A stretch of DNA of 64,000 nt, taken from the sequence record MN871444.1. The stretch is one strand, 5' to 3'. The notes beneath the pieces were generated by a model. The model was not told the DNA's origin, did not search any database, and saw only the letters and a list, made by a program, of their open reading frames with translations. This document shows, piece after piece, positions 13,487-64,000 of the stretch. Numbering within the stretch: position 1 is the first letter of the stretch; every line of letters starts with the position of its first letter. A program made the position numbers and the translations under genes.

Positions 13487-13488
13487 GT

Positions 13489-48269: not shown

Positions 48270-48271
48270 AA

Positions 48272-48301
48272 GGGAGAGGCTTCGGCCTCTCCCTTTTTTT
48301 A
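48272..48301. terminator. bidirectional intrinsic terminator
   Basis: AAAA-GGGAGAGGC-ttcg-GCCTCTCCC-TTTTTTT. Confidence 0.9.
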
Positions 48302-48359: not shown

Positions 48360-50885
48360 TTATGCCAATGAGATAGTTGAGCGTGCTTCAACCCAGTCAG
48401 TGCCCAGAGTATTCGAACTCCCTGAGGTTAATCTATACCATCCGGCGATTACGTAGGTGTGGGTTAGGGTATTCGACCCTACCGTGATCGTTTGTGTCTT
48501 TATTGCTTTATCCAGATTTTTTGCGAAATAACCTGCCGGCCAATACCCAGTCGTAGGAACCGATGAGGTTGCCGACATGCCAGAAGCGTACTTTGTAGTC
48601 AAGTAAGTTGCGGACGTGGGATCGGAATCCTCCACTATAAAATCATCCGAGGTCATTTTTGGGATATACCTGACCCCTTTATTGTTGGTACTCCCCGCTA
48701 CAGTGAAATCATAGCCATCCGCCGGCTGACATAAATAAATATTGTTTTTTACAACACCCGTACCGCGGGTAGTTTCAGCACCGGTATTATTACGCATACC
48801 CCCTACGTCAGATACGCCAATAGCGCAGTTCCGAAATATATTATTTTTTGCAATAATTCCCGTGACATATGACCGACTAACCCCGGCTGGAACATCAGTA
48901 TTATTCCACCCGCCTCCAGAAGTTCGATAACTACTTTCTAAATACGGGTCTATGTCAAAAACATTGTCCGATACATTTAAAAATCCATAGGGTTGACCTA
49001 GTTTACTAGATGATGCAAAATTACCACCCGAGACATCCACTCCTGAAGTACCGAGGCGAATAAATTCGTTATCTTTAATAACAAGGTTATTAATAAACGT
49101 ACAATATTTTAAATTTATTCCTTTGTCTAACCCATAGAACAAATTGTCTTTTGCCACCAATCGATGTATTGCTGGAGTGGGGGTATACTGCCCAACCCTA
49201 GCTAATATTCCAGTCCCAGTGCGCATTGTGGACATTATCGGGTCTACCCATCCAGTAGGGCAAAATACTTTACCCAAACCCCATGATGAATATAGATTGG
49301 CGTCCGGTAACGTTCTAGTAAACTGGTTGCCGGAAATTCTTATATCTCTGATGCCAAATATTGGGGATGTTTTTGTGGTATTACCTGCACTCGCTAGGAA
49401 ATAGGTTTCTGGAAGGACAAAGGAATGTAATGCATAATCGAATTGGCCTGGGGGGACTGAGTTCGTTACTGCCACTTGTGGGTACGGTGAAATTAATATA
49501 CCTACGTTCCACAATGAGTCAGAACCTTGAGACGGGACGTTGGACCCCCCTGCGGCAAATACCGCGGGAGCCGGAATCATATCAGATATAAGGTTATCTT
49601 TTATATTGATTGCGGCCATATCGTTAGCACCTTCTGTACCACCACTCCAGCCAACCATAATCCCTAAATACTTGGTTCTATTCAATATGTTATTACTTAT
49701 ATTGGTGTACGTACCCCCCAAACAAGCGATACCGCAGGTATCAATCAATACATTATCAGTTATTACACATCCTCGATTGAGAGTTTGAGTGTACCCAACT
49801 AAATTAGATTTGTAGTCAGTTCCAGCGGCAATGGCGTTATCGCCACAATGCTCTATGTAATTTCCAGATACCACTGTGGAATGATTTCCACCTACTCGGA
49901 TGCCATCTCGCATCGAATTTTTTATAGTGCAGTTTTTTATTTCCGCCGACAAATTACTACCGGCCACAATACTGAATCCCCGACACCATAATACACTGAC
50001 GTTGGTTATGCTGACATTTTCGAAGTACTCAGCACGGATCGCCCCCTCAGTCCCTACAGTGGATGCATTGTAGTAGGTGCTGGTGTTAGTGCTATCATAG
50101 GCGAAGAAATTTCCTTCCACCCCAGTTATGGTAAAATCCCTTAACACGCAGTTTGCTGGTTTTGTCCCTGGATAATACAAAGAACCATAACTCATCATAC
50201 CACCCGCCCCGGCTTTGATATGAAAAACAGTCCTTCCTTCACCGGCCCCGATAATACAACCATAATGGTCAAATTGAGCATCAATCAGGTAGTGCCCAGC
50301 TGGGACATATAGTTGTTTATTTTGCAAATAAGCCGTTTTACAAGCGGTCTCCAATAATACTGACATGCCGAGTTGCAGAGAACCATTCTTAATATCGTCA
50401 TATTGGGTTGGGGTAATAAATTTGAAAAAACTTATCATATCCAATTCTGTTTTATGGATTACATTATCTAGTTCTGCCTGTACGGAATTTCCTTGCGTAC
50501 CCCCAAGAAAATTTGTTACTGTAGTGGTTATAAGTCCCGCCCCCAAACCCTCTTCACTTGAACGGAGGTTTTCGCGAAGCACTGAATCATTGCTGTATGC
50601 CCAGGCCCCAGAACCGATGCCACCGGTGGTGTCTGGCGTGCTTCCTGAGGGTACTGTTTTCGGGTAACTGCCGGTCCAAACCAAACGTTGGCCGCCATAA
50701 ACAATTTCTTCTTTTATAGACGTAATGGTAAAACCGACATCGAAAGATTTACTGGCGGTCAGGAAATTCGTCATTGGGATTTGATAATTACTCCCATCTT
50801 CGCTATACAGCAATGCCCCGGTGTTATAACCCAACCCGTAGGTCGGCAGGTCACTCAGGCGCTTTGCGATTACTCTACTGGTCAT
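48360..50885 (-). CDS. tailspike/depolymerase A (841 aa): anchor head, tailspike N-terminal domain and beta-helix body; currently expressed arm of switch 1
   Basis: GAGGT RBS before ATG 50885; KRLSDLPTY anchor; WTGSYPKTVPSGSTPDTTGGIGSGAW matches the Tail_spike_N-type motif; pectate-lyase-like repeats. Confidence 0.85.
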   Translation of the reverse strand: MTSRVIAKRLSDLPTYGLGYNTGALLYSEDGSNYQIPMTNFLTASKSFDVGFTITSIKEEIVYGGQRLVWTGSYPKTVPSGSTPDTTGGIGSGAWAYSNDSVLRENLRSSEEGLGAGLITTTVTNFLGGTQGNSVQAELDNVIHKTELDMISFFKFITPTQYDDIKNGSLQLGMSVLLETACKTAYLQNKQLYVPAGHYLIDAQFDHYGCIIGAGEGRTVFHIKAGAGGMMSYGSLYYPGTKPANCVLRDFTITGVEGNFFAYDSTNTSTYYNASTVGTEGAIRAEYFENVSITNVSVLWCRGFSIVAGSNLSAEIKNCTIKNSMRDGIRVGGNHSTVVSGNYIEHCGDNAIAAGTDYKSNLVGYTQTLNRGCVITDNVLIDTCGIACLGGTYTNISNNILNRTKYLGIMVGWSGGTEGANDMAAINIKDNLISDMIPAPAVFAAGGSNVPSQGSDSLWNVGILISPYPQVAVTNSVPPGQFDYALHSFVLPETYFLASAGNTTKTSPIFGIRDIRISGNQFTRTLPDANLYSSWGLGKVFCPTGWVDPIMSTMRTGTGILARVGQYTPTPAIHRLVAKDNLFYGLDKGINLKYCTFINNLVIKDNEFIRLGTSGVDVSGGNFASSSKLGQPYGFLNVSDNVFDIDPYLESSYRTSGGGWNNTDVPAGVSRSYVTGIIAKNNIFRNCAIGVSDVGGMRNNTGAETTRGTGVVKNNIYLCQPADGYDFTVAGSTNNKGVRYIPKMTSDDFIVEDSDPTSATYLTTKYASGMSATSSVPTTGYWPAGYFAKNLDKAIKTQTITVGSNTLTHTYVIAGWYRLTSGSSNTLGTDWVEARSTISLA
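50553..50578 (-). repeat. invertase crossover site A (hix/gix-like, core TC on the minus strand)
   Basis: Minus strand TTCGCGAAAACC-TC-CGTTCAAGTGAA; 18-bp exact inverted repeat with site B. Confidence 0.9.
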
Positions 50886-50909
50886 GTTGTTATACCTCAC
50901 GCAGTGGCG

Positions 50910-50940
50910 TCTTGTAAAAAATGATAAGCATAAAATGAGG
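50910..50940 (-). promoter_or_regulatory. 31-bp upstream element with TTTTATG (late-promoter-like), identical to 63595-63625
   Basis: CCTCATTTTATGCTTATCATTTTTTACAAGA on the minus strand upstream of tailspike A; TATG is the known phiKZ late promoter core. Confidence 0.75.
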
Positions 50941-50947
50941 TCGCACC

Positions 50948-52486
50948 GTGGTTCATTCAAACCTCCGTTCAAGTGATACTGGAAAAGGGGGTAGTTTAGT
51001 TAACACTATTATCGGGGTATCTGTGGGGGATTGGTTAGGCAATACCGTAATAACTCCAGACATGTTTTATACCTCTAATGATGCTGACTGGTCATCGGCT
51101 TTTTCTTTAGCCGCCGCCGCATGTACCAAATTAAAACTGCCCGTGACCTTATTACCTAGGACATATACTTTTAATAAGTCAGTAGATTTGACCATATTTA
51201 GTTATGGTGTTGTCTGCGATGCCTCCAGAAACAATAAGGTTATTTTTAAAGCAACGGATAATTCCACCAATGCTGAAGTTTTTGTGTCTATGAAAAACGT
51301 AGACCGTCGAAAAACAGGTGGATTTCTCATAGACGCCAATAATTTATTTGATGTCGGATTTGATACCACGTGGGATTTGACTGGCGGGCCTTCACTAATG
51401 ATGGTTTGGGAAAAAATACAGATTCAGGGATGGAGAACTATAGGGTGGCGTGCAAATAACAATAATGATGTTTGGAATAAAAATATTACCATTCTCGAGC
51501 CCGGGGCCGGCGTAATAGCAAATGCAGTTAGCTATTATAACCATAGTGCGGGAGGGCCGATTTCATTCGAAGGGTGTAGCTTCCAGGGAGGAAGAGTCCA
51601 AATTACCGCCCAACATATAAGTGCTACCTTTTGCGTGTTTAGGGGCATTGAAATAAAAACGGGAGGTTCTGGATGGAATACTTTTGCTGCGATGGGATGT
51701 CATTTTTTTAAAGATAGTTATTATAATGCATGCTTCACTTTCGCCGGTAACATTCAAGGGTTTACTGTGATTGGTGGGTTGGTTGAACCCACTGACGGTG
51801 GGGTGGTATTGCTGGGGCTGGGTACTGGTTATTTCAATTGCGGGCAATTGGAATTTATGAATACCAGAATTAGTTCCTATAACGCCACTGCACCTGCGGT
51901 GTTAGCCAGCGGAACTATGCTATCAGCTTACGGTAATACCACTATAAAAATAACGGGGGGCATTGCGGAACTGTCTTCTTATGACCCGACGACAATGGGT
52001 TGGGTAAACACCCTAGTCATAGATAAGGTCTTATTAAACCAATTAAACAACACCCCCATAACGCGTGTATTTTCCGGAACCACGTTACGTTACAATAAGC
52101 CAACGGTTGGAAACATCAGCGTCATTAATACCTCATCCACGGCATGTATTGTAACTGATTTACTAAACACGCTGACTACGACAAGTCGAAATTTTGGAAA
52201 TATTTCGGCCCTGGATGGAGCAAAAACAACCAGAAGTGGCGGGACAATAAAATTAGTCTATGCCGATGGCGGTGGGTACGCCGAATATAGATATGCACGT
52301 ACGGGCACCACAGCTGTAACTTTAACTTTAGTATCCGAAGCTTACGTAGACACTACAAGGCAATTATCCGTGTATAATTCCAGTTCTCAGTATGTTTATG
52401 TGGCTAATAGCCGAGCGGCCGGTTCAACTGGCGATTCCTGGACCCTACTAATATCGTTCACCGGCACCCTTGATTACATTCCATAA
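50948..52486 (+). CDS. headless tailspike body B (512 aa): alternative cassette of switch 1
   Basis: Lacks the anchor head; begins at site B in the same frame (SNLRSSD vs ENLRSSE); beta-helix-like sequence. Confidence 0.85.
   Translation: MVHSNLRSSDTGKGGSLVNTIIGVSVGDWLGNTVITPDMFYTSNDADWSSAFSLAAAACTKLKLPVTLLPRTYTFNKSVDLTIFSYGVVCDASRNNKVIFKATDNSTNAEVFVSMKNVDRRKTGGFLIDANNLFDVGFDTTWDLTGGPSLMMVWEKIQIQGWRTIGWRANNNNDVWNKNITILEPGAGVIANAVSYYNHSAGGPISFEGCSFQGGRVQITAQHISATFCVFRGIEIKTGGSGWNTFAAMGCHFFKDSYYNACFTFAGNIQGFTVIGGLVEPTDGGVVLLGLGTGYFNCGQLEFMNTRISSYNATAPAVLASGTMLSAYGNTTIKITGGIAELSSYDPTTMGWVNTLVIDKVLLNQLNNTPITRVFSGTTLRYNKPTVGNISVINTSSTACIVTDLLNTLTTTSRNFGNISALDGAKTTRSGGTIKLVYADGGGYAEYRYARTGTTAVTLTLVSEAYVDTTRQLSVYNSSSQYVYVANSRAAGSTGDSWTLLISFTGTLDYIP
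50952..50977 (+). repeat. invertase crossover site B (core TC)
   Basis: TTCATTCAAACC-TC-CGTTCAAGTGAT; inverted relative to site A. Confidence 0.9.
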
Positions 52487-52493
52487 TTAATGT

Positions 52494-52529
52494 AACATAT
52501 TGGGAGGGCAAAACCCCTCCCTTTTATGC
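52494..52529 (+). terminator. intrinsic terminator, dispersed repeat family member
   Basis: AACATATT-GGGAGGG-caaaa-CCCTCCC-TTTTATGCC. Confidence 0.85.
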
Positions 52530-52572
52530 CCGCGTTCTTTATCGTATGCACTTTTATAAAGGAGGGCACCAC

Positions 52573-53136
52573 ATGGGCTTTACCCCTAATTTCACCCTGT
52601 CCTCATATTACGTGGTTAATATTGGACTACCGTCTTCAGAATTGGTATTTGGATTAATTAACCACGATAACCATTCCACATTTGCCGCCTCTGATGTGTT
52701 CTTTGATATCCCTGCGAGCACTGCTCCGGGTAGTTTAAGAAACACGCAAATCACGTTATATCGTCAACCGCCATACGACTACGATTCGATGGTAGTGACT
52801 TATGACAGGTTAGACCTCGATGAGGCGTTAGAAAAACATCTGCCTATTATTTTGTCCCTTGAAGAAACCGATCTCAACCTCACCGATCTCATTCCTTATT
52901 TCAATAATACTTATAACCTATCTTTAATTGACGGTGAGGTTTTAGGAGGGGTTATCGATACGGTTGCAGATACAAATGCGTTCACCATCTCCGATTCCAG
53001 TTTAGCGTGGCGAGGCACCGTAGATTTTACAGCCATTGCTCTAGGCCATTCTTTAATGGTTGATGACACTGGGGAATACATCACGGTCGGAAATGGCCTT
53101 TTATTGGAAATCACGCCACCACCAACAAGTGAGTAA
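52573..53136 (+). CDS. tailspike adaptor-like paralog 1 (187 aa)
   Basis: LPSSELVFGLINHDN, YDRLDL and TISDSSLAW motifs shared with three paralogs; GGAGG RBS. Confidence 0.7.
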   Translation: MGFTPNFTLSSYYVVNIGLPSSELVFGLINHDNHSTFAASDVFFDIPASTAPGSLRNTQITLYRQPPYDYDSMVVTYDRLDLDEALEKHLPIILSLEETDLNLTDLIPYFNNTYNLSLIDGEVLGGVIDTVADTNAFTISDSSLAWRGTVDFTAIALGHSLMVDDTGEYITVGNGLLLEITPPPTSE

Positions 53137-53142
53137 AATAAC

Positions 53143-54918
53143 ATGGCACAGACAGTTGCGAAGAAAGGCCTGGCCGCACTCCCTGATTTGGGGAGCGTTA
53201 TGGGTGAAAACGGCTACTTTCATTATAATGAAGATGGGGTAGACTATCGTTTTCCTGTGGCTCTTTTAAGTCAAATTTCCGTACTTGCTGCCGCTACTGG
53301 CGCAAAAAGCATCGGCCTAGATTTAACAACCGTGTGGAACGTCCTTTCTGGGCGCACCCGCAATTTCTTTGAATTCCTCAGCGATGATAAAATCATTGCA
53401 GTGAAAGCCGGTGAAGATGTGGATGTTACCACAGAACTTCAAGCGGCAATGGATGCGAATTGTGCTATCAAAATACCTGACGGTAGCTATTTCGTGACGC
53501 AAGCTATCACCACGTCCATCAATTCTGGTTTGGTGGGTGATGGTCCTCGCAACTGCGTGATTGATAACCGCGGTATTGACCATCTTTTCAAATTCCCTTC
53601 TGGGTATAACCGTGGGTGGAAAGTGTGGTGTGGGTTTAAAATCAAATCCAGCAATCAGGCGGCACTCAAGAAATATGCCTTTTATTTCATGGGCTCCGCT
53701 GCGGCAGGGTATTTGGATTATGCTGCTTCCCATTGGTTCCAATTAATTGAGTTTGATGGTACCGGCATGGGTGGAGGTTGGTATCTCCAGGATTGTTTCC
53801 GGGTAACCATCCGGGACTGCGGCGCAACGGCACACGGCAACCCGTTCTATATTGCAGGTTCAGTAGTTCAACTTACCGTCGATAACTACGTCAACAATGG
53901 TGATAACGCCCCCGTCATGGACGTCGGGTCATACGGCGTATATATGACCAATAAAACGTACACCGATGGTAATGGCGTCAAGTCTCCAGAAGGCATCAAT
54001 TTTACTCATTGTAAATTTGTTAAACAGGCTGTTGGCGCTTATACGGTCGGATTATTTATCAACTTTTCTAAATGTGAATTTGATTATTGTTGGCAATACG
54101 GTGGGTATTATCGTGGTGGTAGTCAGGTCACGTTCGATATGTGCTATGTGGGTGCCCAAGCAAATCGACCTAATGATTTTGTGGGGTTCATGATCCCAGC
54201 ACAGGCGACGGGTGTTGCAGAAAAAGTTGTAGTTCATAAATGCACCATTAACATGCAAACGAACACAAATGCCAATGCCGCGAATTATGTCTCTAAAGGT
54301 ATCCAAATAGGTAATTCAACCGTGAACCCGATTGCGGCAGATATTGTCAGCAATACTTTCCGGGGAACAGGATACACCATCGGGATTCATGTGGCCCGGG
54401 GACTTGGCATTAAACTGGATGCCAATGCATTCCTATATACCGGCGTGGATATCCAGGTAGACGAATGTCGCACCTTATGGATGGCCAACAATACCACCAG
54501 TATTGATGATTCCGGTAATCCGCGCGGCACTTACAGCGTAACCACTACTGACAACAGTGCCGAATGGTTTATTGTTGGGAATGACGGAACGTTCACTACT
54601 AAAAGTATCGTCAACCCTGCCCGATGCATCATAATGAATCGGTATTGGACGCCCTACGTTACCAGAACTGCATGGTCACCGATAGCAGCAGTCAGTACGA
54701 GTATTTCTGCTGGCGGTACTTATTCATTCAGTATGGCCGCTACAGCGGATGCCAACGCCGTTTATTCTTTAGCGGGCATAACCGTTGCGGGGTTGCTTTG
54801 GAGTGTAGTTTATATTAACACCACCTCTGTTCGCGTGACCTTTTTTAATCCGACTGCCTCTACGATTACACTCAATGCTTCGTTGCGTGTGAAGACAGAG
54901 TGGCCTCCAGTGGGGTGA
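53143..54918 (+). CDS. tailspike/depolymerase C (591 aa)
   Basis: KKGLAALPDL...HYNEDGVDYRFP anchor; DVTTELQAAMDA...IPDGSY pectate-lyase-type start; beta-helix repeats. Confidence 0.8.
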   Translation: MAQTVAKKGLAALPDLGSVMGENGYFHYNEDGVDYRFPVALLSQISVLAAATGAKSIGLDLTTVWNVLSGRTRNFFEFLSDDKIIAVKAGEDVDVTTELQAAMDANCAIKIPDGSYFVTQAITTSINSGLVGDGPRNCVIDNRGIDHLFKFPSGYNRGWKVWCGFKIKSSNQAALKKYAFYFMGSAAAGYLDYAASHWFQLIEFDGTGMGGGWYLQDCFRVTIRDCGATAHGNPFYIAGSVVQLTVDNYVNNGDNAPVMDVGSYGVYMTNKTYTDGNGVKSPEGINFTHCKFVKQAVGAYTVGLFINFSKCEFDYCWQYGGYYRGGSQVTFDMCYVGAQANRPNDFVGFMIPAQATGVAEKVVVHKCTINMQTNTNANAANYVSKGIQIGNSTVNPIAADIVSNTFRGTGYTIGIHVARGLGIKLDANAFLYTGVDIQVDECRTLWMANNTTSIDDSGNPRGTYSVTTTDNSAEWFIVGNDGTFTTKSIVNPARCIIMNRYWTPYVTRTAWSPIAAVSTSISAGGTYSFSMAATADANAVYSLAGITVAGLLWSVVYINTTSVRVTFFNPTASTITLNASLRVKTEWPPVG

Positions 54919-54922
54919 TATA

Positions 54923-55444
54923 ATGGCGACGTATGTTCCCGATATTTCGTTGACTTCCGATGAGCTGGTATACCAGCTCATCAATAACGACAACGGTACT
55001 TATTATGATGCGGCCCATCTAACTCTGGGTGTTCCGTCAGTCAATACCACTGATTACTCAGACAAAAATACGCGCATTACTGTATCACATCCAAAATACG
55101 GTGCAATAGATGGCACCCTCCTTTATTACAATCGAATGGACATACAGAAGGTGTTTGATAATACCTTCCCTTTATTCGTTTGTTTAAATGGGGAATTAAC
55201 CGCCAGTGAGTTAGGTGCGTATTTCCAATCCACCTATGGTGTTGGCCTAGGTAGTGTTGACATATCTCCGACTATCATTTCTGGGACCACCAACACGGAG
55301 ATAGTTTTCACCATCTCCGATTCCAGTTTAGCCTGGTATGGCCAAACCCCAATGATGGTGGTTAGTAAAAGCCATTATTTTTACGGTACTCCGGACACTC
55401 TGGGGTATTACGTTTTATCTGATGGTAGTCTGTTGACTGCTTAA
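54923..55444 (+). CDS. tailspike adaptor-like paralog 2 (173 aa)
   Basis: LTSDELVYQLINNDN, YNRMDI and TISDSSLAW motifs. Confidence 0.7.
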   Translation: MATYVPDISLTSDELVYQLINNDNGTYYDAAHLTLGVPSVNTTDYSDKNTRITVSHPKYGAIDGTLLYYNRMDIQKVFDNTFPLFVCLNGELTASELGAYFQSTYGVGLGSVDISPTIISGTTNTEIVFTISDSSLAWYGQTPMMVVSKSHYFYGTPDTLGYYVLSDGSLLTA

Positions 55445-55455
55445 TGAGGGCTATC

Positions 55456-56115
55456 ATGGCAGGATTTTACATCGTTGATTTGTCCTTGCCATCTGATGAG
55501 ATGGTGTTAGGGTTAATCAACAATGACAATGAATTAGCATTGCGGATGGACGAAGTTAATTTGGGGGTAGCTCAAGTTAATACCGACGTCATAAGGCACC
55601 CCCGAGACACTACCATGCTCGTGACTAACGGGAAATACGCCAGAGATACATTACGGGTCTACTACGACCGACTCAGTATTGAGGATGTTATTTCCATGAA
55701 ATATCCCATCATTGTTCGGGGCGTGGCTGATGGTAATGTATCTGATCTACTGACCTACGTCAATTCTGAATATGGGTTGGGTTTGGTGCCAGCAGATATC
55801 GTCGATGCCGCATTAAGCGATTTGACTGAGGAAATTGCCAGCGCGGAACTGGACATGCAGTCGACTAACCGCGCTTGGTTGGGGTCGGTACCTATCCTCA
55901 TTCTCGGTGATGGCATGACTGTATTACGTCAGGAAGACGATGATGGCATCATGTTGTTATTTGATGATGATACTTACATCGCTGTAGGTAGTCCAGCATT
56001 CGCTATTGAGAACATGGTCACTTTGGCGGAAGGGCAGTCCGTATTAGTCACCCAGGCGGTAAACCCTATCACCGCGACAGATGGTACCTACTATCTGCTG
56101 CGTAGCGCAACGTAA
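55456..56115 (+). CDS. tailspike adaptor-like paralog 3 (219 aa)
   Basis: LPSDEMVLGLINNDN, YDRLSI and RAWLG motifs; GAGG RBS before ATG 55456. Confidence 0.7.
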   Translation: MAGFYIVDLSLPSDEMVLGLINNDNELALRMDEVNLGVAQVNTDVIRHPRDTTMLVTNGKYARDTLRVYYDRLSIEDVISMKYPIIVRGVADGNVSDLLTYVNSEYGLGLVPADIVDAALSDLTEEIASAELDMQSTNRAWLGSVPILILGDGMTVLRQEDDDGIMLLFDDDTYIAVGSPAFAIENMVTLAEGQSVLVTQAVNPITATDGTYYLLRSAT

Positions 56116-56129
56116 TAAGGAGAGCCGTT

Positions 56130-58040
56130 ATGGCCCAGACCCCCGTAACAAAAACACTGACTGATTTACCCGTATATTCCAATACCGGTTATGCTGGTCA
56201 TTTGTTGTACACTGATAGTAATATTGAATATCGATTACCTTTAAATTCTCTCGTACGAAAGTCAGAACTGGGAAATAGTGATGGGTTTAAGTATATTGGT
56301 CAAGTGGAATCATGGGCCGATTTACAATCGATTACATTAACCGAAGCTAACGTCGTCATTAAGTTAAAGTCATACGTTGCGGGCGGGGCTTTAACGGGAA
56401 CATCTCCTTCGGGTGGCGGATACTTCATTTCAGTATCGGGCACAGCCACTGACGACGGTGGTAGTATATGCGTACCTTCCGGACAAACTAATTTTTATCT
56501 TGTTCGAATCAGGGCAACAGATGAAATCAATCTATCCGAATATGGGTTGGTTCCTGGAGGTGAAATTGCAATACCTTTGATTAAAGCTGTGGCTTATTCA
56601 AGATCAGTGGGCATTACTAAAATAGTTATCCCGCCGTCATATGGCGAACAGTATTATACCTGGTCATCGCAGGTTAACGTTGACGTAACTAAATACCCTC
56701 TGACGTTAATGGGTGGTTCCGGTGAAAATATGAACGAAGTAATGGTGTACCATTACCCCACCGCGACTAATGAAGTGGCCATTGATTTTAGTACTACTTC
56801 GGCAGGGTCATCACCCACAGAAGCAGCATGCATCTGCGGTTTTTATTTTTATAATCAAAATACCGCCGTCAACGCATCTGCCATCCAGTTTTCAGATGCG
56901 TGGGCACATAAGGCCAGAAATTTATACATCACGCATTATGCGTTAAGCGCCGGGATTCGGATGGTTAATATCAACTCCTGGACCGAAAACTTCCAGGGAG
57001 AAAATTTAAATATCCGGCACTGCAAATATGGGTTTTGGTTGTACACCACAGGGTCCTGGCAATCGTTCTATGGAATGAAACTGGAGAAATATTATTTTAA
57101 CCACGGTAGCGCCGTAGGTGGGCCATCATATTCAATGTATCTTGGCAATGGCACTTCCACTGGATATGCATTCCTTTATGCTGCAGACTTGGATATGGGT
57201 GGTTGGCTGGGTACGACATATTCCACGGGACCTCACTGCGGCATATATCTTGCACCTTATTCTATCGTCATGGGCAAGTGCCGCATGAATTATGATGGTA
57301 CACAGCAAGCTAGTCTGGCAACTTATTTTACCGCCGTATACACGGCGTCAACCCAATGTATCGCGCGGCTTGATTTTACCAACAACAACGACCAGTTCTC
57401 TTATGTATCCATACAAGCCCCAGATTCTGCAAGCACCCTGAGTTATGCTCTTTGGGATAACTTAGCATATCCCGCATTAAATGGCTCTAAGACGTACGGG
57501 CGCTCAAACTGGATGAACGTGGCGATGGCGCGTTCCCCAATTATTTTATCTGGTGCACAACAAAAGTGGAAAACTACGGTGACTTCCACTAGCACTACCA
57601 AAACAGACCCCGGAATAATTAGGGTAGTCGGTTTACCAATATTATCAAATTTCAAAGTTGAGATTAAAACCAGCGGGACTAACCAGGTGTGCAATAGAAC
57701 ATTTATTGTTAATGTACATAACCAGGATTTGGTCGCCGCAGTAACAGAACAACAGCAATTGTCTGCAGGGACGGCAACAACAAGCACCTTTAACTCAACG
57801 ACCTCTACAGTTACCTCTATAAGCACCACAACGCTGACGCAATACTCGTCGTTCACAAATCAACGAGTTTATTGTCGCACATACAACGGCGTTCAGCCTG
57901 GGTATTATTCAGCTGGAAATGGTCAGACGTTCGATATCGTTATTCCTCCATCGACGTATAATGGCACCTCGGCTAATGCGGATGCGGTTGTGACGTCAGG
58001 ATTAACCACTGCGATTGAAATAATTATTACTCAGATTTAA
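56130..58040 (+). CDS. tailspike/depolymerase D (636 aa)
   Basis: KTLTDLPVY...LLYTDSNIEYRLP anchor; DGFKYIGQ...GGGYF...DDGG domain common in enterobacterial phage tailspikes; beta-helix body. Confidence 0.8.
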   Translation: MAQTPVTKTLTDLPVYSNTGYAGHLLYTDSNIEYRLPLNSLVRKSELGNSDGFKYIGQVESWADLQSITLTEANVVIKLKSYVAGGALTGTSPSGGGYFISVSGTATDDGGSICVPSGQTNFYLVRIRATDEINLSEYGLVPGGEIAIPLIKAVAYSRSVGITKIVIPPSYGEQYYTWSSQVNVDVTKYPLTLMGGSGENMNEVMVYHYPTATNEVAIDFSTTSAGSSPTEAACICGFYFYNQNTAVNASAIQFSDAWAHKARNLYITHYALSAGIRMVNINSWTENFQGENLNIRHCKYGFWLYTTGSWQSFYGMKLEKYYFNHGSAVGGPSYSMYLGNGTSTGYAFLYAADLDMGGWLGTTYSTGPHCGIYLAPYSIVMGKCRMNYDGTQQASLATYFTAVYTASTQCIARLDFTNNNDQFSYVSIQAPDSASTLSYALWDNLAYPALNGSKTYGRSNWMNVAMARSPIILSGAQQKWKTTVTSTSTTKTDPGIIRVVGLPILSNFKVEIKTSGTNQVCNRTFIVNVHNQDLVAAVTEQQQLSAGTATTSTFNSTTSTVTSISTTTLTQYSSFTNQRVYCRTYNGVQPGYYSAGNGQTFDIVIPPSTYNGTSANADAVVTSGLTTAIEIIITQI

Positions 58041-58050
58041 GGAAAAGAAT

Positions 58051-58332
58051 ATGTCGTTTACCAAAACTAGCATTTTAGAGTACAATAAATTATTTTATTC
58101 AATCGGGGCTGAAGTTACAGGGGGGTCTGAAGAAGTAATATTGACTTACACCGCTACCGGAATTAATTACGGCGGTAGGGAAATTGGTGATGTCGCAGAA
58201 ATAGTATTTTCTATTACGTGTGACTCGCCACAAATACAAACTAATTGTACCTCTGTTATTTCAGTTCAGTCGACCGATGCTGATGAAATATTAGCTCAGG
58301 CGGAATCGGAATTGCAAAAATCTTTGGGCTAA
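58051..58332 (+). CDS. small tailspike-associated protein, possibly an assembly chaperone (93 aa)
   Basis: AAGGA RBS; directly downstream of a spike gene; function inferred from position. Confidence 0.6.
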   Translation: MSFTKTSILEYNKLFYSIGAEVTGGSEEVILTYTATGINYGGREIGDVAEIVFSITCDSPQIQTNCTSVISVQSTDADEILAQAESELQKSLG

Positions 58333-58370
58333 AACAACATATCGGGAGGGCGAAAGCCCTCCCTTTTGTG
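58333..58370 (+). terminator. intrinsic terminator, dispersed repeat family member
   Basis: AACAACATATC-GGGAGGGC-gaaa-GCCCTCCC-TTTTGTG. Confidence 0.85.
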
Positions 58371-58422
58371 TGAAACTGTACGGCCCATTTTATGCTGATA
58401 AAATTTTATTGAGGGGTCTATT

Positions 58423-60885
58423 ATGGCAACGCTGCCGTCGTTGAAAAAAATATCGGATCTGCCGACCTACGGCAGTTCTTCGCCAGACTCAGGAACGATG
58501 CTGTACACCGAAAACGGGATTGATTACAAACTACCAATAAATACGCTAACCCGCGCAATTGATTTAGCATCCAACCTTTCTGGAAAAGGGGGTGGGTTAG
58601 TCGGATTAGAGCAGGGTGGAACCGTACAGTCAGCGTTACTGGGGTATATTAATGCAGCCGCCTTTGGCTATCTCGCCGATTATAACCCGGTGACTAATAC
58701 CGGTACGGATAATACCGCGGCACTTAGAGCGGCCGCCACGTACTGCTTACAGCATGGGATTAGAAAATTAATCCTTCCGCCGGGTATGGGGTTAATTTCC
58801 GATTATATTCCAATAGATGTCGGTACTGTGGGGGAAGCTGTTGCAGATCGATTTAAAGGATGTCAGGACGGGTTCCACATCCAAGGGGCTGGGATGTATT
58901 CCAGTTTATTGGTGTTTGATGCGCCTGATGCAGATACCCCAGCGATAAAAGCAACTGGAGATTGGGGGACCCACACGGCGCGCGCAATCAGTGATTTAGC
59001 GATCGTCCCCCGCACTACTGCCGCGTATAACGTAGATACGCTAGGTCAGGGTATCCAGTTTATTGGTGGGTGTTTCATCCCCATCAGAAACGTGGTGATT
59101 GGTAGATTCCATAAAGGGATTTGTTTCTGGAATAAAAATAAAGGCGTTAACGACACCGCAAATACATTCACTGCCGGGGATTTTACTGAATTTATTCGGG
59201 GCAACAATATACGCATATTCAACTGTGATATCGGTATCGATTTCATGGTTACTTTGGGCAACAATTCATTTCACGGCATTAACTTTACCCAAACCCAAGT
59301 GCAGATTAGAAAATATGGCGGTATTGGGGTTCGTTTTTATGATGACGGTTCTAGGGCCGCTATCGTCACACCTTCAAGCAATTACCAATTCATTGCTAAC
59401 GTTTACAATGCTAAATTAGATATAAATCTATTTGGTGATGACTCATCTACGTGCTATGGGCTCTATTTAAGCGGTGCCCAGGGTAGGGGGATGTCGGGAG
59501 ACATTACCTGCGAAGGGGCCATGACTCTCAAAACAAACAGTTTTGAATGGTATCAGAGTTTCGGTAGCCTACACTCCATATCTGCCATAAATCTTGAAAT
59601 TGGAGCCACTGATACTTCAACCAGACCGGTCGCATTTATGTTTTCTAATGCGGCATATCCCCAAACTTACTTTGATGGCAGTGATCCTACTTTATTAAGT
59701 ACGTCATACCCCCGCCAGTTTGATGGAAACAATCATGGCAATACTGGTATGGATTTATTAAATATTCGCGGGGCGCAATCTGGAAGTATCTGGTCCCAGG
59801 TCGCAAGCAACGTGTCGGTAGGGTGGATTTTTTCAACACGTACTACCGGTGGAAGCCGACCGGCTCAACGTACTGTCTGGCAATTTTCTTATGATGGCAC
59901 TCGCATATCTTCAGCCGGCACATCGGTCGGACTGTACAATTCAACAGTGGGGGTTGATTTAACTGCGGCGGCATTAGTCCCTTCTGGTAATACTACCTTG
60001 AATATTGGTTCGGCATCGTATCGATTCAACAGTGCTTATTTTAATGGTTGGAATATAGGTTCTGGCGGCGTTGTTCCTACTGCTGATGTGAGTTTTAACG
60101 TTGGTAGCTCTACTTTCCGAGTCAACCGGTCTTATGTTGCCTCTCGGTATTACACATCGACTGTATTTGATTCGTCGGGAACTGGTTCTCCCGAAGGGGT
60201 GGTTGCGGCAGCAATTGGTTCTACTTATCGCAGAACTGACGGTGGTGCAAATACATCGTTTTATGTGAAGGAATCTGGAACAGGCACTACGGGCTGGGTA
60301 TCCACTGGCTCAGTCAGGCCGTATGTTTCTGGCATGTTTGTGAGCCCAGGGAATCTGGTGTTGTCTGGAAACTACATATTTAAATATCTGGGTACTGCTG
60401 CAGATATTACCGTCGCTCCAGTACCTGGAACACTATGGAGTATGTTGATTCCAGGAGCTTCAGTAAAAATAAAAGCCACGGCAACTCAAACCACCACAAC
60501 GGGGACCAACACAGCCCTAACTTGGGCATCCGCTACCACGGAGTATAATAGTAGCAGTATTTATACGGTTGCTACTGCCGGAATTACTGTTCCAGTGGCC
60601 GGGATATATCGCATCGCCGGTAGGGTTGCTTTTGCTTCCAACAACACAGGTACCCGGTCAGCCGGAGTATTTATTAACGGCTCCTATTACGCTGGGTCTC
60701 AGGCTAGATTCGTTGCCAAATCCGGCGGGTATGCAACTACCGCAGATTACAATGACACGTTATCGCTTGCCGCTGGGTCGATTATTACGTTATCTGGATT
60801 CCAGGATTCTGGTGGGAACTTAGATACTGTTGCAACAGCCCCAGATGTATCTTTCCTGGTAGTCAGTTTGGTAAGCTACGTTTAA
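58423..60885 (+). CDS. tailspike/depolymerase E with C-terminal C1q/TNF-like domain (820 aa)
   Basis: KKISDLPTY anchor; DNTAALRAA...LILPPG beta-helix start; GSPEGVV...RTDGG...YVKESG motif; ITVPVAGIYRI C1q-like signature. Confidence 0.8.
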   Translation: MATLPSLKKISDLPTYGSSSPDSGTMLYTENGIDYKLPINTLTRAIDLASNLSGKGGGLVGLEQGGTVQSALLGYINAAAFGYLADYNPVTNTGTDNTAALRAAATYCLQHGIRKLILPPGMGLISDYIPIDVGTVGEAVADRFKGCQDGFHIQGAGMYSSLLVFDAPDADTPAIKATGDWGTHTARAISDLAIVPRTTAAYNVDTLGQGIQFIGGCFIPIRNVVIGRFHKGICFWNKNKGVNDTANTFTAGDFTEFIRGNNIRIFNCDIGIDFMVTLGNNSFHGINFTQTQVQIRKYGGIGVRFYDDGSRAAIVTPSSNYQFIANVYNAKLDINLFGDDSSTCYGLYLSGAQGRGMSGDITCEGAMTLKTNSFEWYQSFGSLHSISAINLEIGATDTSTRPVAFMFSNAAYPQTYFDGSDPTLLSTSYPRQFDGNNHGNTGMDLLNIRGAQSGSIWSQVASNVSVGWIFSTRTTGGSRPAQRTVWQFSYDGTRISSAGTSVGLYNSTVGVDLTAAALVPSGNTTLNIGSASYRFNSAYFNGWNIGSGGVVPTADVSFNVGSSTFRVNRSYVASRYYTSTVFDSSGTGSPEGVVAAAIGSTYRRTDGGANTSFYVKESGTGTTGWVSTGSVRPYVSGMFVSPGNLVLSGNYIFKYLGTAADITVAPVPGTLWSMLIPGASVKIKATATQTTTTGTNTALTWASATTEYNSSSIYTVATAGITVPVAGIYRIAGRVAFASNNTGTRSAGVFINGSYYAGSQARFVAKSGGYATTADYNDTLSLAAGSIITLSGFQDSGGNLDTVATAPDVSFLVVSLVSYV

Positions 60886-60894
60886 GGAGTTACC

Positions 60895-61413
60895 ATGCCA
60901 GCAAGTATGTATGTAGTGGATACGTCCCTACCCTCTGTTGATTTGGTCTACGGGCTTATCAACAACGATAACAACACGGTTTATAGTAAATCAACACTCA
61001 ACCTGGCTACGCCAGAAACAAATACCAATCCCGCGATTGATCGTAATAGTAAAATCCTGGCTTCGAACATCAAATACAGTAACAACACTTTGATGTTGTA
61101 TTACGATAGATTGGATATTGCTGACGTATTGCGCATGGAGTTACCCATCATTTTGTCGAATGTAACCGAAACCACGGTAGACCAAATGATGTGGTTTTTT
61201 AACTCCACGTACAAGATGGGATTGACCAAAGCTGAAATTAATGCGTCGGCAGTTGATTTAACCAATAACACCACTACGTGGACAATTGCGGATAATTCAA
61301 TGGCGTGGGTGGGAAATCTACCATTAACCATTTTACCATCCGGGTATGGCCTTTTGATTGATGAAACAAACAATCAATTGTTGGATGAAGATGGGTCATA
61401 TTTAATTTTATAA
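60895..61413 (+). CDS. tailspike adaptor-like paralog 4 (172 aa)
   Basis: LPSVDLVYGLINNDN, YDRLDI and TIADNSMAW motifs; AAGGAG RBS. Confidence 0.7.
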   Translation: MPASMYVVDTSLPSVDLVYGLINNDNNTVYSKSTLNLATPETNTNPAIDRNSKILASNIKYSNNTLMLYYDRLDIADVLRMELPIILSNVTETTVDQMMWFFNSTYKMGLTKAEINASAVDLTNNTTTWTIADNSMAWVGNLPLTILPSGYGLLIDETNNQLLDEDGSYLIL

Positions 61414-61417
61414 ATAG

Positions 61418-61456
61418 GGCATAAAAGGGAGGGCAAAAGCCCTCCCAATATGTTGA
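61418..61456. terminator. bidirectional terminator, dispersed repeat family member
   Basis: GGCATAAAA-GGGAGGGC-aaaa-GCCCTCCC-AATATGTTGA between convergent genes. Confidence 0.85.
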
Positions 61457-63001
61457 TTACACTGCGGTTCCCGTTGCATCAACCCATCCAGTATTTGTGG
61501 CATTTCGCCAAATGGGTTTATTCAAGGTAGTATCAAAATATTGATCCCCGGAATTAGAAAATGCATTCGGCCGCAACGCGGTAGTCCCAACCGCCACTGT
61601 CTGTGGCCCTACTTCATACCAGATGCCATTATACCGCCAAAATTCATATGTGTTGCCTAATCTACATGTTTTTCTTCCATCTGAAGTACATCCTTTTACT
61701 ACAAACGTCGAACTCCTTACTAGAGTAATATTTGCGTTTCCGTAGATTATAACACGTTGGCCCTTGACCCCGTTCAGTAAATCAGTTATATCCGTAGCCA
61801 CGGTATCTGTAGGTATGTATGTTTTCACACCTTCAACATTTGGTGTGCTGCCAGTACCTCGCTGATATCCATCGTACATAACGTGCAAAACCCCATTAAA
61901 CAAAGAATCAGAGATCGCTGAGGTTATATGCCCGGTGGATAGAAATGAAGCTATTCGGGGCTTTAAACTCATATCGGATTGATCCGCGGAAGAAATCCAT
62001 TCAATACCGTATTTGTGGGTTCCGTCAGCACGGCAGTTACTCAACTGACTGCGATTATCTAAAACAAATCCGCTATAAGTTCCACTCGCCCCATTTGAAT
62101 TATTAAGGGCATGACAATTACTCATTATGGCTGAGCCATAAAAACCATGACCATAATTTAAATCAGCGCGGCAATTGGTTAATTTATGCATGGCTCCCGT
62201 GGCTGACACACATATCCCAATTTCCGATAACTCCCCCTCCAAATTGACGGCGTAGTTATTTGCGCCACCCAGCAATATACCGCAAAGATACAATGATGTT
62301 GATTGTATCGCAGTAATGCCAGTATTACCCTGAATACGTTCAATAAAATTATCGGCGCCATTGAACACAAACACCCCGGTTCTTGCCGATCTCGAACGAT
62401 TTAATAAACAGTTTGTTCCAGAAAGATCTGAAAATTTTCCAATCAGAGCATTTGTAACCAATGCCTCATCGGAAAAATAATCCCACTTACATGCAGTGAC
62501 AATCCAGTCGTTTGACCCCGCACGAAGATTGACCCCACCACCAGGCAATGCTAACCCACCGCCTTTAAAATCAATCCCGATAATCCCACCACAGTCGCCA
62601 CCACCAGTAGGGGTATCTATAACCCATCCTGAAGTTGCCGGCGTAAACTGAGTACCGTACTTAGTTATGGACGCCCCGAAGGATAATATCCCACGCACAG
62701 CACCAAAGGTACAACCAATATGGCAGACGTTAGATTTATTTATAAAATTTAATTTATAAACCCCTCTAGGCCAGTAAATCCCACCACCACCTAACGAACT
62801 GACATAATCTACCAAGGCTTGCGCCGCTGCAGAATCGTCAGTTATGCCATCCCCAATAATACCATAATCCTTAGCATTAAAAACATCGCTTAAACGCGCC
62901 GCCAATGTTCTGGTAACTGATGGGCCATTTTGCGCGGCAAAAGACACCATGCTTGCGCCATCACTTGAACCCAGGTTTGAGGGAATATATGTCGACACCA
63001 A
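61457..63001 (-). CDS. headless tailspike body F (514 aa): alternative cassette of switch 2
   Basis: No anchor head; starts across site C (SNLGSSD); NAKDYGIIGDGITDDSAAAQA pectate-lyase-3 start; C-terminal GTTALRP...YFDTTLNKPIW...WVDATG motif. Confidence 0.85.
   Translation of the reverse strand: MVSTYIPSNLGSSDGASMVSFAAQNGPSVTRTLAARLSDVFNAKDYGIIGDGITDDSAAAQALVDYVSSLGGGGIYWPRGVYKLNFINKSNVCHIGCTFGAVRGILSFGASITKYGTQFTPATSGWVIDTPTGGGDCGGIIGIDFKGGGLALPGGGVNLRAGSNDWIVTACKWDYFSDEALVTNALIGKFSDLSGTNCLLNRSRSARTGVFVFNGADNFIERIQGNTGITAIQSTSLYLCGILLGGANNYAVNLEGELSEIGICVSATGAMHKLTNCRADLNYGHGFYGSAIMSNCHALNNSNGASGTYSGFVLDNRSQLSNCRADGTHKYGIEWISSADQSDMSLKPRIASFLSTGHITSAISDSLFNGVLHVMYDGYQRGTGSTPNVEGVKTYIPTDTVATDITDLLNGVKGQRVIIYGNANITLVRSSTFVVKGCTSDGRKTCRLGNTYEFWRYNGIWYEVGPQTVAVGTTALRPNAFSNSGDQYFDTTLNKPIWRNATNTGWVDATGTAV
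62960..62985 (-). repeat. invertase crossover site C (hix/gix-like, core TG on the minus strand)
   Basis: Minus strand TTCCCTCAAACC-TG-GGTTCAAGTGAT; 20-bp exact inverted repeat with site D. Confidence 0.92.
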
Positions 63002-63018
63002 CCCTCAAGGACATAAAA

Positions 63019-63570
63019 ATGATCTACGGTTATGCCCGAGTTTCTACTCAACATCAGGATACTACACTACAACTTATTGCGCTTCAGGCAGCCGGTTGCG
63101 ATGAAATTCGCGAAGAAAAAGCGTCTGGTAGAAGTAGAAACAGACCCGTATTGAAGAAACTGCTAACCGATCTTCAATCCGGCGATGAATTAGTATTGTG
63201 GAAAATAGACAGGATGGGTAGGAATGTATTACATGCCTTAACCTGGTTGGCTGAGCTGCAGGATAAGAATGTAAACCTCAGGTCAATCACCGACGCTATC
63301 GATATGCGTACTGCTTCTGGCCGTTATAGTTTTCGCAATATTTTGAATGCCGCACAGTACGAATCGGACGTAAATAGCGAAAGAACCTTGGCTGGACTAG
63401 CTGCAGCCAGAGCACAAGGTAGGGTGGGTGGAAGAAAACCAACAATGACCGAACCCGTTTTGGAGAAAGCACGGGATTTAATAAATGCCGGAAATAATTA
63501 CCGTGAAGTAGCTGAAGTCATCGGAGTGACCACAAAAACGATATACAAATATTTTCCAGTCAATTCATAA
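63019..63570 (+). CDS. serine DNA invertase, Hin/Gin/Pin family (183 aa)
   Basis: YARVST catalytic Ser9, LVLWKIDRMGR, ERTLAGLAAARAQGRVGGR and C-terminal HTH VIGVTTKTIYKYFP; AAGGA RBS before ATG 63019. Confidence 0.95.
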   Translation: MIYGYARVSTQHQDTTLQLIALQAAGCDEIREEKASGRSRNRPVLKKLLTDLQSGDELVLWKIDRMGRNVLHALTWLAELQDKNVNLRSITDAIDMRTASGRYSFRNILNAAQYESDVNSERTLAGLAAARAQGRVGGRKPTMTEPVLEKARDLINAGNNYREVAEVIGVTTKTIYKYFPVNS

Positions 63571-63577
63571 TTTTTTG

Positions 63578-63606
63578 ATGAGGCGGCTTGGCCGCCTCAT
63601 TTTATG
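63578..63606 (+). terminator. invertase terminator
   Basis: ATGAGGCGGC-ttg-GCCGCCTCAT followed by TTTATG. Confidence 0.75.
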
Positions 63607-63625
63607 CTTATCATTTTTTACAAGA
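63595..63625 (+). promoter_or_regulatory. 31-bp upstream element with TTTTATG (late-promoter-like), identical to 50910-50940 on the minus strand
   Basis: Exact match by manual comparison; lies just before the RBS of tailspike G. Confidence 0.75.
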
Positions 63626-63634
63626 GGGGCTATC

Positions 63635-64000
63635 ATGGCCAACAGAGCGATTACGAAGAAAATTAGTGCTTTGCCGACCTACGCACTGAACAACAATAAC
63701 GGCAATTTACTGTATAGTGAGGGGGGTGCAAATTACCAATTTCCGTTGAGTAATATTGCCCTTCTTTCAAACCTGGGTTCAAGTGAAGTGGGTAAAGGGG
63801 CGAGTCTGATAGGGACATCAGACGGTAGCAATTTACAACAAATTGCAACAGTAGTAAGTGACCAACTTATAACCAACCCACAAATTGTTGCTGGCGACAA
63901 CATGTCCGTTTTAGACCGAATCAAAGTCAAAGGCCAGTATGACATCAACCCGGCACCTCAGGAACCCCAAGCCGCAGTAGGTATTACTTTTGGAGGGCAG
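63635..64000 (+). CDS. tailspike G, 5' part (runs off the window); currently expressed arm of switch 2; not in the ORF track
   Basis: GAGGGG RBS; manual translation MANRAITKKISALPTYALNNNNGNLLYSEGGANYQFPLSNIALLSNLGSSEVGKGASLIG... is open to the window end. Confidence 0.9.
   Translation, partial: MANRAITKKISALPTYALNNNNGNLLYSEGGANYQFPLSNIALLSNLGSSEVGKGASLIGTSDGSNLQQIATVVSDQLITNPQIVAGDNMSVLDRIKVKGQYDINPAPQEPQAAVGITFGGQ
63762..63787 (+). repeat. invertase crossover site D (core TG)
   Basis: TTCTTTCAAACC-TG-GGTTCAAGTGAA; left arm is 10/12 identical to the hixL arm TTCTTGAAAACC. Confidence 0.92.

What the first reader, a model, noticed from the sequence alone, without database searches (positions are those of the whole stretch)
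50553..63787. Orthogonal core dinucleotides (TC vs TG) would insulate the two switches from each other
Aligned on the hix/gix AAACC-NN-GGTTT pattern, pair A/B has core TC and pair C/D has core TG, while GTTCAAGTGA is identical in all four sites. Established: serine recombinases need matching 2-bp overhangs to religate. Neither core is palindromic, so no cross-pair combination matches. Cross-pair events would otherwise delete about 12.4-12.8 kb (A x C or B x D, direct repeats) holding three fixed spikes and four adaptors. This looks like a natural version of the core-orthogonality trick used in synthetic recombinase logic.
Basis: partly seen in the sequence, partly recalled or inferred. Interest (0 to 1): 0.85.

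Follow-up and report, generated by a model that had tools for sequence, protein, structure and literature searches.

The report
Two insulated phage tail-spike inversion switches
A giant Klebsiella phage uses one DNA-flipping enzyme to run two separate tail-spike switches, and their cut sites differ at the crossover base, which should keep the switches independent; related phages fit this, but nobody has tested it directly.

Summary
The window is Serratia/Klebsiella jumbo phage KpGz_1. It has four 26-bp sites that fit the Hin/Gin/Cin/Pin ("Din") invertase consensus of 12-2-12 bases.

- **Switch 1 (sites A/B):** flanks a 0.4-kb module. The central dinucleotide is TC (GA on the other strand, as in Mu gix).
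- **Switch 2 (sites C/D):** flanks a 0.8-kb module that also carries the genome's only invertase gene. The central dinucleotide is TG (CA).

Each module carries an upstream element and the N-terminal anchor of a tail spike. It flips between two outward-facing spike bodies that have no start codon and are all open in the same phase.

Relatives keep the same two classes: KpHz_2 has three sites per class, and a metagenome phage has two per class. They show several within-class rearrangements, no cross-class junction, and no inverted fixed cluster.

Published Hin data show that a single core mismatch blocks ligation of recombinants, so insulation is mechanistically expected. It is not demonstrated, and adaptation is not shown.

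Invertases of this family disfavour deletion, and KpHz_2 tolerates same-core direct repeats.

Verdict: a new variant of a known kind, of moderately high interest.

The parts
50553..50578 (-). Site A, class 1 (core TC on the minus strand; GA at 50565-50566 on the plus strand). The inner half-site is the coding end of anchor module N1. The outer half starts the body of spike L.
50952..50977 (+). Site B, class 1 (core TC at 50964-50965). The inner half-site lies in the non-coding far end of module 1. The outer half starts silent body R.
50567..50963 (-). Invertible module 1. It holds a 31-nt upstream element (50910-50940) and the N1 anchor (ATG at 50885, about 105 codons, with a Tail_spike_N domain). 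It currently reads leftwards into spike L.
48360..50885 (-). Currently assembled spike 1 (841 aa): N1 anchor plus body L (beta-helix / pectate-lyase-like).
50960..52486 (+). Silent body R (508 codons, open from the site, no start codon of its own). A relative carries N1 fused to this body as an intact 613-aa gene.
52546..61413 (+). Fixed cluster: four DUF7941 virion proteins (52546-53136, 54923-55444, 55444-56115, 60895-61413), three fixed spikes (53143-54918, 56130-58040, 58423-60885) and a 93-aa ORF.
61457..62977 (-). Silent body C (506 codons, open from site C). It has a pectate-lyase fold and is up to 82% identical to spikes of unrelated Klebsiella phage contigs.
62960..62985 (-). Site C, class 2 (core TG on the minus strand; CA at 62972-62973 on the plus strand). 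The inner half-site lies just upstream of the invertase gene.
63019..63570 (+). Din-family DNA invertase, 183 aa, the only one in the genome. It lies inside invertible module 2.
62974..63773 (+). Invertible module 2: invertase gene, hairpin (63577-63601), the same 31-nt upstream element (63595-63625), and the N2 anchor (ATG at 63635, about 46 codons). It currently reads rightwards.
63762..63787 (+). Site D, class 2 (core TG at 63774-63775). The inner half-site is the coding end of N2. The outer half starts body D.
63770..64000 (+). Body D (518 codons from the site), currently fused to N2. It runs off the window; in the record the whole N2-D gene is 563 aa.

Best explanation
KpGz_1 has two independent host-range switches driven by one Din-family serine invertase. 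Each invertible module carries a shared upstream element plus the N-terminal virion anchor of a tail spike. Flipping the module fuses that anchor in frame to one of two outward-facing spike bodies, giving 2 x 2 spike combinations here (up to 3 x 3 in KpHz_2).

The invertase, encoded inside switch 2, acts in trans on switch 1, 12 kb away. Strand exchange happens at the central dinucleotide of the 26-bp sites. That dinucleotide is GA (TC) in switch 1 and CA (TG) in switch 2. Any cross-switch synapse would therefore produce a mismatched 2-nt overhang that cannot be ligated in the recombinant configuration. Each anchor stays with its own pool of bodies, and the 12-kb region between the switches is neither inverted nor deleted.

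Shown: the sites, their class structure, the in-phase bodies, the single invertase, natural within-class isomers, and the absence of cross-class products in relatives.

Inferred: the exact cleavage position, the block by mismatch, and any selective advantage.
For: - **Enzyme.** Resolvase plus HTH_7 domains and PHROG 'DNA invertase'. Gin is the best solved structure, E 5e-45. There is one copy per genome in KpGz_1 and KpHz_2.
- **Sites.** They fit the published Din table and consensus. Positions 13-14 are the exchange point there, and every published pair shares one core (PMC3241671). In the Mu record the annotated G-segment boundaries fall in the GA core. The symmetry centre in the window's sites is at 13/14.
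- **Position 15.** A difference at this position exists within the published pixL/pixR pair, so it is tolerated.
- **Mismatch effect.** A single-bp core change in hixL prevents recombinant ligation (PMC4817059).
- **Reading frames.** All 29 bodies examined are open in the same phase from the site.
- **Class fidelity.** About 18 TC sites and 18 TG sites were found across KpGz_1, KpHz_2, a 49-kb ENA contig that holds both switches, and a dozen other contigs. None is mixed.
- **Within-class events.**
  - A 632-aa body is fused to N2 in one phage and is silent, at 100% identity, in three others.
  - N1 plus the window's silent body R exists as an intact 613-aa gene, joined at residue 105/106.
  - One contig matches the product of an inversion between two class-1 sites of a KpHz_2-like array.
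- **Fixed cluster.** It has the same orientation in all genomes that show it.
Against: - No recombination was measured, and the cleavage position is inferred by homology and symmetry.
- The natural isomers map the exchange only to about a 20-bp interval, because the sequence around the core is identical.
- From my own recall (not retrieved here): in P1 Cin, sites with mismatched cores still recombine at low frequency with local conversion. If so, insulation would be leaky rather than absolute.
- The sample is small, about 16 distinct anchor-body junctions. Large cross-pair inversions might be missing because they are harmful for other reasons.
- Relatives without an invertase keep the same TC and TG sequences in their frozen spikes. 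The class difference could therefore simply be inherited.
- This invertase clade differs from Hin and Gin in helix E. The phage probably belongs to the phiKZ-like, nucleus-forming group. Fis/enhancer control, and with it the family's usual selectivity rules, is unverified.
Confidence: 0.68

Rival explanations
1. The core difference is a historical by-product. The two switches had separate origins, or drifted apart with local conversion keeping each pair uniform. Any insulation is incidental and not needed, because deletions are already disfavoured by the invertasome's topological filter and large inversions would be tolerated.
For: - The TG (CA) site type is the common type of a large prophage invertase family: 71 sites in gut metagenome contigs, 26 of 69 loci with an invertase 46-51% identical within the locus, in many cases right beside the site. 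Switch 2, which carries the invertase, may have arrived as a unit, with switch 1 arising separately.
- Invertase-less relatives keep the same classes.
- KpHz_2 tolerates same-core direct repeats, and one of its class-2 inversions would flip a fixed spike gene.
- Spike units have their own upstream element and hairpins.
Against: - The outer half-site is identical (10 of 10 bases) in both classes, while the only differences sit at or next to the core.
- The new core is present in every partner of a class, up to three sites. This needs coordinated change that drift alone makes unlikely.
- The two pools of bodies share no close relative, the best cross-class identity being 32-35%.
Confidence: 0.3
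2. There is no effective insulation. A single mismatched core base is tolerated often enough (leaky ligation, repair or local conversion) that cross-pair inversions and deletions occur at biologically relevant rates.
For: My own recall of P1 Cin quasi-sites, not retrieved here. The invertase clade is uncharacterised and differs from Hin and Gin at helix-E positions where activating mutations map.
Against: Hin data for a single-bp core change. No mixed site, no cross-class junction and no inverted fixed cluster were seen in any relative, while at least four within-class rearrangements were.
Confidence: 0.12
3. Switch 1 is not operated by this invertase. It is either frozen or served by a host or prophage enzyme, so the question of cross-talk does not arise.
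For: Switch 1 is 12 kb from the invertase gene and from any enhancer inside it. Many relatives have a frozen spike 1 in either orientation with no invertase in the contig.
Against: - The partner site at the non-coding end of module 1 is kept perfectly in all three invertase-bearing genomes, although the adjacent half-site varies.
- In invertase-less lineages the orphan sites decay by 1-2 changes.
- Module 1 is found in both orientations, and the predicted N1-R fusion exists.
- Both classes share the outer half-site.
Confidence: 0.08

Closest known systems
Phage Mu Gin/gix G-segment (also P1 Cin/cix, e14 Pin/pix)
   Same: A small serine invertase acts on 26-bp 12-2-12 sites that lie inside tail-fibre coding sequence. 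Inversion swaps receptor-binding parts and so host range. The class-1 core is the same GA as gix.
   Different: - In Mu the constant N-terminal part lies outside and the variable C-terminal parts lie inside the segment. Here the anchor and its upstream element are inside, and the variable bodies lie outside facing away.
- Mu has one switch with one core. Here there are two switches with two cores.
- The host phage is reported as obligately lytic for its genus, not temperate.
- The invertase is only about 48% identical to Gin.
Salmonella Hin/hix flagellar switch
   Same: The invertible segment carries the invertase gene and an outward-reading expression signal. The evidence that a core mismatch blocks recombinant ligation comes from this system.
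   Different: Hin flips a promoter only. Here the segment also carries the first 46-105 codons of the product, and each orientation has a target gene. Fis/enhancer dependence is not verified here.
Min multiple-inversion system of plasmid p15B
   Same: One invertase acts on more than two sites and shuffles tail-fibre parts. KpHz_2 has six sites.
   Different: All listed mix sites share one core (AA), so every inverted pair can recombine. Here the sites fall into two non-matching classes that partition the array.
Synthetic orthogonal att pairs of phiC31 integrase (six overlap dinucleotides)
   Same: One serine recombinase is used, and the site pairs are made independent only by the central dinucleotide (PMC3936721).
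   Different: That system is engineered, uses a large serine integrase and is unidirectional. The case here is natural, uses a small invertase and is reversible. Orthogonality here is inferred, not measured.
phi80 PinL-like invertase clade of enterobacterial prophages
   Same: These are the closest proteins, at 60-71% identity. They share the distinctive helix-E sequence.
   Different: They sit next to side-tail-fibre segments of temperate phages, and phi80 itself has no site pair. None is known to serve two switches.

Membership tests
Din (Hin/Gin/Cin/Pin) DNA-inversion systems | Small serine recombinase: N-terminal catalytic domain plus C-terminal helix-turn-helix | tested here: met
   Pfam Resolvase (E 4e-36) and HTH_7. 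PHROG 125 'DNA invertase'. Full-length match to Gin structures 4m6f/3uj3.
Din (Hin/Gin/Cin/Pin) DNA-inversion systems | 26-bp sites: two imperfect 12-bp inverted half-sites around a 2-bp core, fitting the family consensus | tested here: met
   Zero or one mismatch to the generic consensus at all four sites and nowhere else in the genome. Symmetry centre at positions 13/14. Published table for comparison.
Din (Hin/Gin/Cin/Pin) DNA-inversion systems | Partner sites in inverted orientation with identical cores; A at core position 2 on the canonical strand | tested here: met
   A/B are inverted and both GA; C/D are inverted and both CA. The rule is stated in PMC3241671.
Din (Hin/Gin/Cin/Pin) DNA-inversion systems | Both orientations occur in nature | tested here: met
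   This rests on comparison between related phages, not within one clone.
Din (Hin/Gin/Cin/Pin) DNA-inversion systems | Fis-bound recombinational enhancer in cis, usually inside the invertase gene | not tested
   No annotated enhancer was available to compare. The invertase clade has Arg at the position that aligns with Gin H106, by family homology the position of the activating Hin H107Y change. Host Fis access is uncertain in a phiKZ-like phage.
Mu G / P1 C / e14 P segment architecture | Constant N-terminal fibre part outside the segment; alternative C-terminal parts (and chaperones) inside it | tested here: not met
   The arrangement is reversed: anchor plus upstream element inside, bodies outside.
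Min-type multiple inversion (p15B) | More than two sites, all sharing one core, so that all inverted pairs can recombine | tested here: not met
   There are four sites here and six in KpHz_2, but in two classes with different cores.
Orthogonal-core site sets for one serine recombinase | Pairs recognised by one enzyme that differ in the central dinucleotide | tested here: met
   There is one invertase per genome. The outer half-site is identical, and the classes differ at the core and one adjacent base.
Orthogonal-core site sets for one serine recombinase | Cross pairs yield no recombinant product | not testable with these tools
   Only indirect evidence: no cross-class junction in about 16 distinct anchor-body junctions, and no inverted fixed cluster.

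The most novel reading that the evidence does not exclude
Selection has installed two non-matching crossover dinucleotides so that a single invertase runs two independent host-range switches (multi-way in KpHz_2) in an obligately lytic, probably nucleus-forming jumbo phage. There the host factor Fis may not reach the DNA and the usual topological filter may be missing. Core matching would then be the main rule deciding which sites may recombine. This would be a natural counterpart of the orthogonal-overlap design used in synthetic recombinase circuits.
Probability: 0.3. Interest if true: 0.8.

Novelty: new variant of a known kind. Interest (0 to 1): 0.62.

Why it matters
- It would be the first natural case I could find, in the literature searched, of one invertase partitioned between two switches by its crossover bases.
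- It shows a reversed switch design, in which a flipping anchor plus expression signal chooses between fixed, outward-facing receptor-binding bodies.
- It places programmed host-range variation in a lytic jumbo Klebsiella phage, which matters for reading host-range data on such phages.
- It also gives a descriptive rule for annotating these genomes. Start-less 'tail fibre fragments' next to such sites are alternative spike bodies, not pseudogenes.

Tried and rejected
- **IMG/VR site scan**: ten single hits, judged chance matches. The invertase has no relative there.
- **phi80 as a site comparator:** its annotated repeat next to pinL is a hairpin, and no Din site is present.
- **Johnson review:** not held. 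One literature query was malformed.
- **Contig look-up with a protein from a fetched locus:** I went through protein clusters instead.
- **Search with silent body C** to learn which anchor its relatives carry: the relatives are spikes of other phage types with other anchors, so it says nothing about cross-class exchange.
- **A shared 11-base start between a class-1 body (L027) and class-2 bodies** looked like a cross-class transfer. The proteins are not detectably similar, so I dropped it.
- **Sigma-70 promoter scan:** no enrichment (39 found, 37.5 expected).
- **tRNA scan:** none.
- **Register shift:** I considered that the real difference might be CC versus GG. Symmetry and the Mu boundary annotation argue against it.
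Full report

**What the window is.** The region is 100% identical to Serratia phage KpGz_1 (MN871444.1). This is a 269-kb unannotated jumbo phage isolated on Klebsiella pneumoniae, and window position x equals record position x + 62000. [quoted passage not shown] That genus is described as obligately lytic (PMC13757433). It groups with phiKZ-like phages (PMC12390700), and the window itself encodes multisubunit RNA polymerase beta pieces, a tail sheath and a terminase.

**The observation.**
- The four sites are real and far beyond chance. They are the only ones in the genome.
- The inner halves are TTCGCGAAAACC (A), TTCATTCAAACC (B), TTCCCTCAAACC (C) and TTCTTTCAAACC (D).
- The outer half begins with C in A/B and G in C/D, followed by the shared GTTCAAGTGA.
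- The published Din-family table has the same 12-2-12 layout, with exchange at the two central bases. Its cores are AA or GA, and A at the second core position is strongly conserved. Read on the other strand, the window's cores are GA (the gix core) and CA, so both obey that rule.
- In the Mu record the annotated G-segment boundaries fall inside the GA core.
- Dyad symmetry centres all four window sites on positions 13/14.
- The extra difference at position 15 is of a kind tolerated within the published pixL/pixR pair.

**Anatomy.**
- The only invertase (183 aa; Resolvase plus HTH_7; Gin is the best solved relative; 62% identical to phi80 PinL; one copy per genome) lies inside switch 2.
- Both invertible modules carry the same 31-nt upstream element (100% identical, pair I4) followed by a start codon and a conserved N-terminal anchor of about 45 residues. 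The three fixed spikes share this anchor.
- N1 carries an extra Tail_spike_N domain.
- The site sits exactly at the anchor-body junction. The class-defining core base is the third base of a Leu codon, so it is silent at the protein level. Position 15 makes the first residue of the body Arg or Gly.
- All 29 bodies examined in 13 loci are open in the same phase from the site, including the silent, start-less ones.
- The window therefore encodes four possible spike combinations on top of three fixed spikes and four DUF7941 proteins.

**Relatives.**
- KpHz_2 has six sites: three TC (+, -, +) around module 1 and three TG (-, -, +) around module 2.
- A 49-kb ENA contig holds both switches with the same classes, and its module 1 faces the other way.
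- Five further contigs with the same invertase show only TG sites at switch 2.
- Contigs without an invertase carry one frozen spike 1 (TC) in either orientation and one frozen N2 spike (TG) in either orientation. Their orphan sites have 0-2 changes.
- About 36 sites were found in all, and none is mixed.

**Evidence that the switches have really flipped.**
1. A 632-aa body is fused to N2 in one phage and lies silent at the invertase end, at 100% identity, in three others.
2. A related phage has an intact 613-aa gene made of N1 (98% identity) plus the window's silent body R (97.4% over all 508 residues), joined at residue 105/106. This is the product expected from flipping module 1.
3. Another contig matches the product of an inversion between the first two class-1 sites of a KpHz_2-like array. 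The displaced body there is reduced to remnants.

No cross-class junction appears among about 16 distinct anchor-body junctions. The fixed cluster is never inverted. The closest cross-class bodies are only 32-35% identical. If cross pairs were as usable as cognate pairs, roughly half of four or five inferred events should have been cross-class. Seeing none is suggestive, on the order of P = 0.03-0.06 by that crude count. The sample is small, and selection against large inversions is an alternative reason.

**Mechanism.** For Hin, one base change in one hixL core prevents ligation in the recombinant orientation (PMC4817059). GA against CA is such a one-base mismatch in parallel alignment and a two-base mismatch in antiparallel alignment. 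No cross pair can therefore yield matched overhangs. Insulation is the expected consequence of the sequence. This is an inference from the family, not a result obtained on this enzyme.

Deletion between direct repeats is already disfavoured by enhancer-dependent invertases (my own knowledge of the family, not from a source read here). KpHz_2 also lives with same-core direct repeats in both classes. The events the mismatch would really block are the 13.2-kb A x D and 12.0-kb B x C inversions. Those would exchange bodies between anchors and flip the fixed cluster. Each spike unit has its own upstream element and hairpin, and one legitimate KpHz_2 inversion already flips a fixed spike. The cost of such cross events is therefore unclear, and so is the case for adaptation.

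**Origin.** A metagenome scan found 71 TG-type sites of very similar sequence in gut contigs. In 26 of 69 loci an invertase 46-51% identical lies within the locus, in many cases right beside the site, and these loci relate to temperate Klebsiella phages. The CA core is thus the common type of a large, little-studied prophage family. The TC-plus-C type was seen only in the Eowyn-like phages, so switch 1 looks derived. A new core had to be fixed in two or three partner sites while the adjacent 10 bases stayed identical. That pattern favours selection or local conversion over simple drift, but it does not prove either.

**Caveats on control.** All 114 close homologues of the invertase have Arg at the position that aligns with Gin H106, by family homology the position of the activating Hin H107Y change. 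They have Tyr at the position aligned with residue 114 of the Gin chain. The phage is probably of the nucleus-forming kind. Whether Fis and an enhancer are used is unknown. If they are not, the topological filter would be absent and core matching would matter more.

**Verdict.**
- Observation: confirmed.
- Interpretation: partly supported.
- Novelty: a new variant of a known kind. This is a Din-family switch with reversed architecture (the anchor flips and the bodies stay put), two core classes under one enzyme, and a lytic jumbo phage as host. I found no description of it in the literature searched.

Noticed in passing
window 48268-48297, 52502-52521, 58344-58363, 61427-61446, 63577-63601: GC-rich hairpins recur after spike genes, each directly followed by a T-rich motif that runs into the next unit's upstream element. 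They look like combined terminator and phage-specific start signals. The sigma-70 scan shows no enrichment.
   Followed up: partly
window 50910-50940 and 63595-63625; similar at 58381-58427: The 31 nt upstream of N1 and N2 are 100% identical, and a 72% similar copy lies upstream of the fixed 820-aa spike. This is probably the spike promoter and leader carried by each invertible module.
   Followed up: partly
window 11783-17970: Two large ORFs match phage multisubunit RNA polymerase beta subunits. The Eowyn group is placed among phiKZ-like, chimallin-encoding phages. If a phage nucleus forms, host Fis may not reach the DNA.
   Followed up: partly
loci L032-L100 (metagenome contigs): A large family of TG(CA)-core Din sites in gut metagenomes, many lying next to an invertase 46-51% identical to the window's. 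The nearest isolates are temperate Klebsiella phages. This core is not in the published site table.
   Followed up: partly
window 63019-63570 (residues 104-118): Helix E of this invertase clade differs from Gin and Hin at positions where activating, Fis-independent changes are known. All 114 homologues share Arg106 and Tyr114.
   Followed up: partly
L002, L024-L028, L106-L110: Relatives without an invertase have spike 1 and the N2 spike frozen in either orientation. Their orphan sites are slowly decaying, which suggests repeated loss of the switch.
   Followed up: yes
L014 2700-2960: In this 3.9-kb JGI contig the sequence departs from N2 right after the shared upstream element, and no second site is found. 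It may be an assembly join at the repeat or a different arrangement.
   Followed up: partly
L023 20347-21779: The N2-fused spike of the ENA contig is split into two ORFs, where a relative has one 646-aa gene. That is one break, of a type I did not determine.
   Followed up: no
L023 15126-17695: The 172-aa DUF7941 gene lies on the opposite strand and upstream of a 658-aa spike. In KpGz_1 and KpHz_2 it follows its spike on the same strand. No site was found that would explain this.
   Followed up: no
window 61457-62977: Silent body C has a pectate-lyase fold. It is 73-82% identical to 650-770-aa spikes on contigs of about 4-44 kb that carry other N-terminal anchors, which points to horizontal exchange of depolymerase bodies.
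   Followed up: partly
window 5400-11876 (-): A 2158-aa ORF that I did not examine. Separately, the record is labelled 'Serratia phage' and UNVERIFIED_ORG, although its stated host is K. pneumoniae.
   Followed up: no
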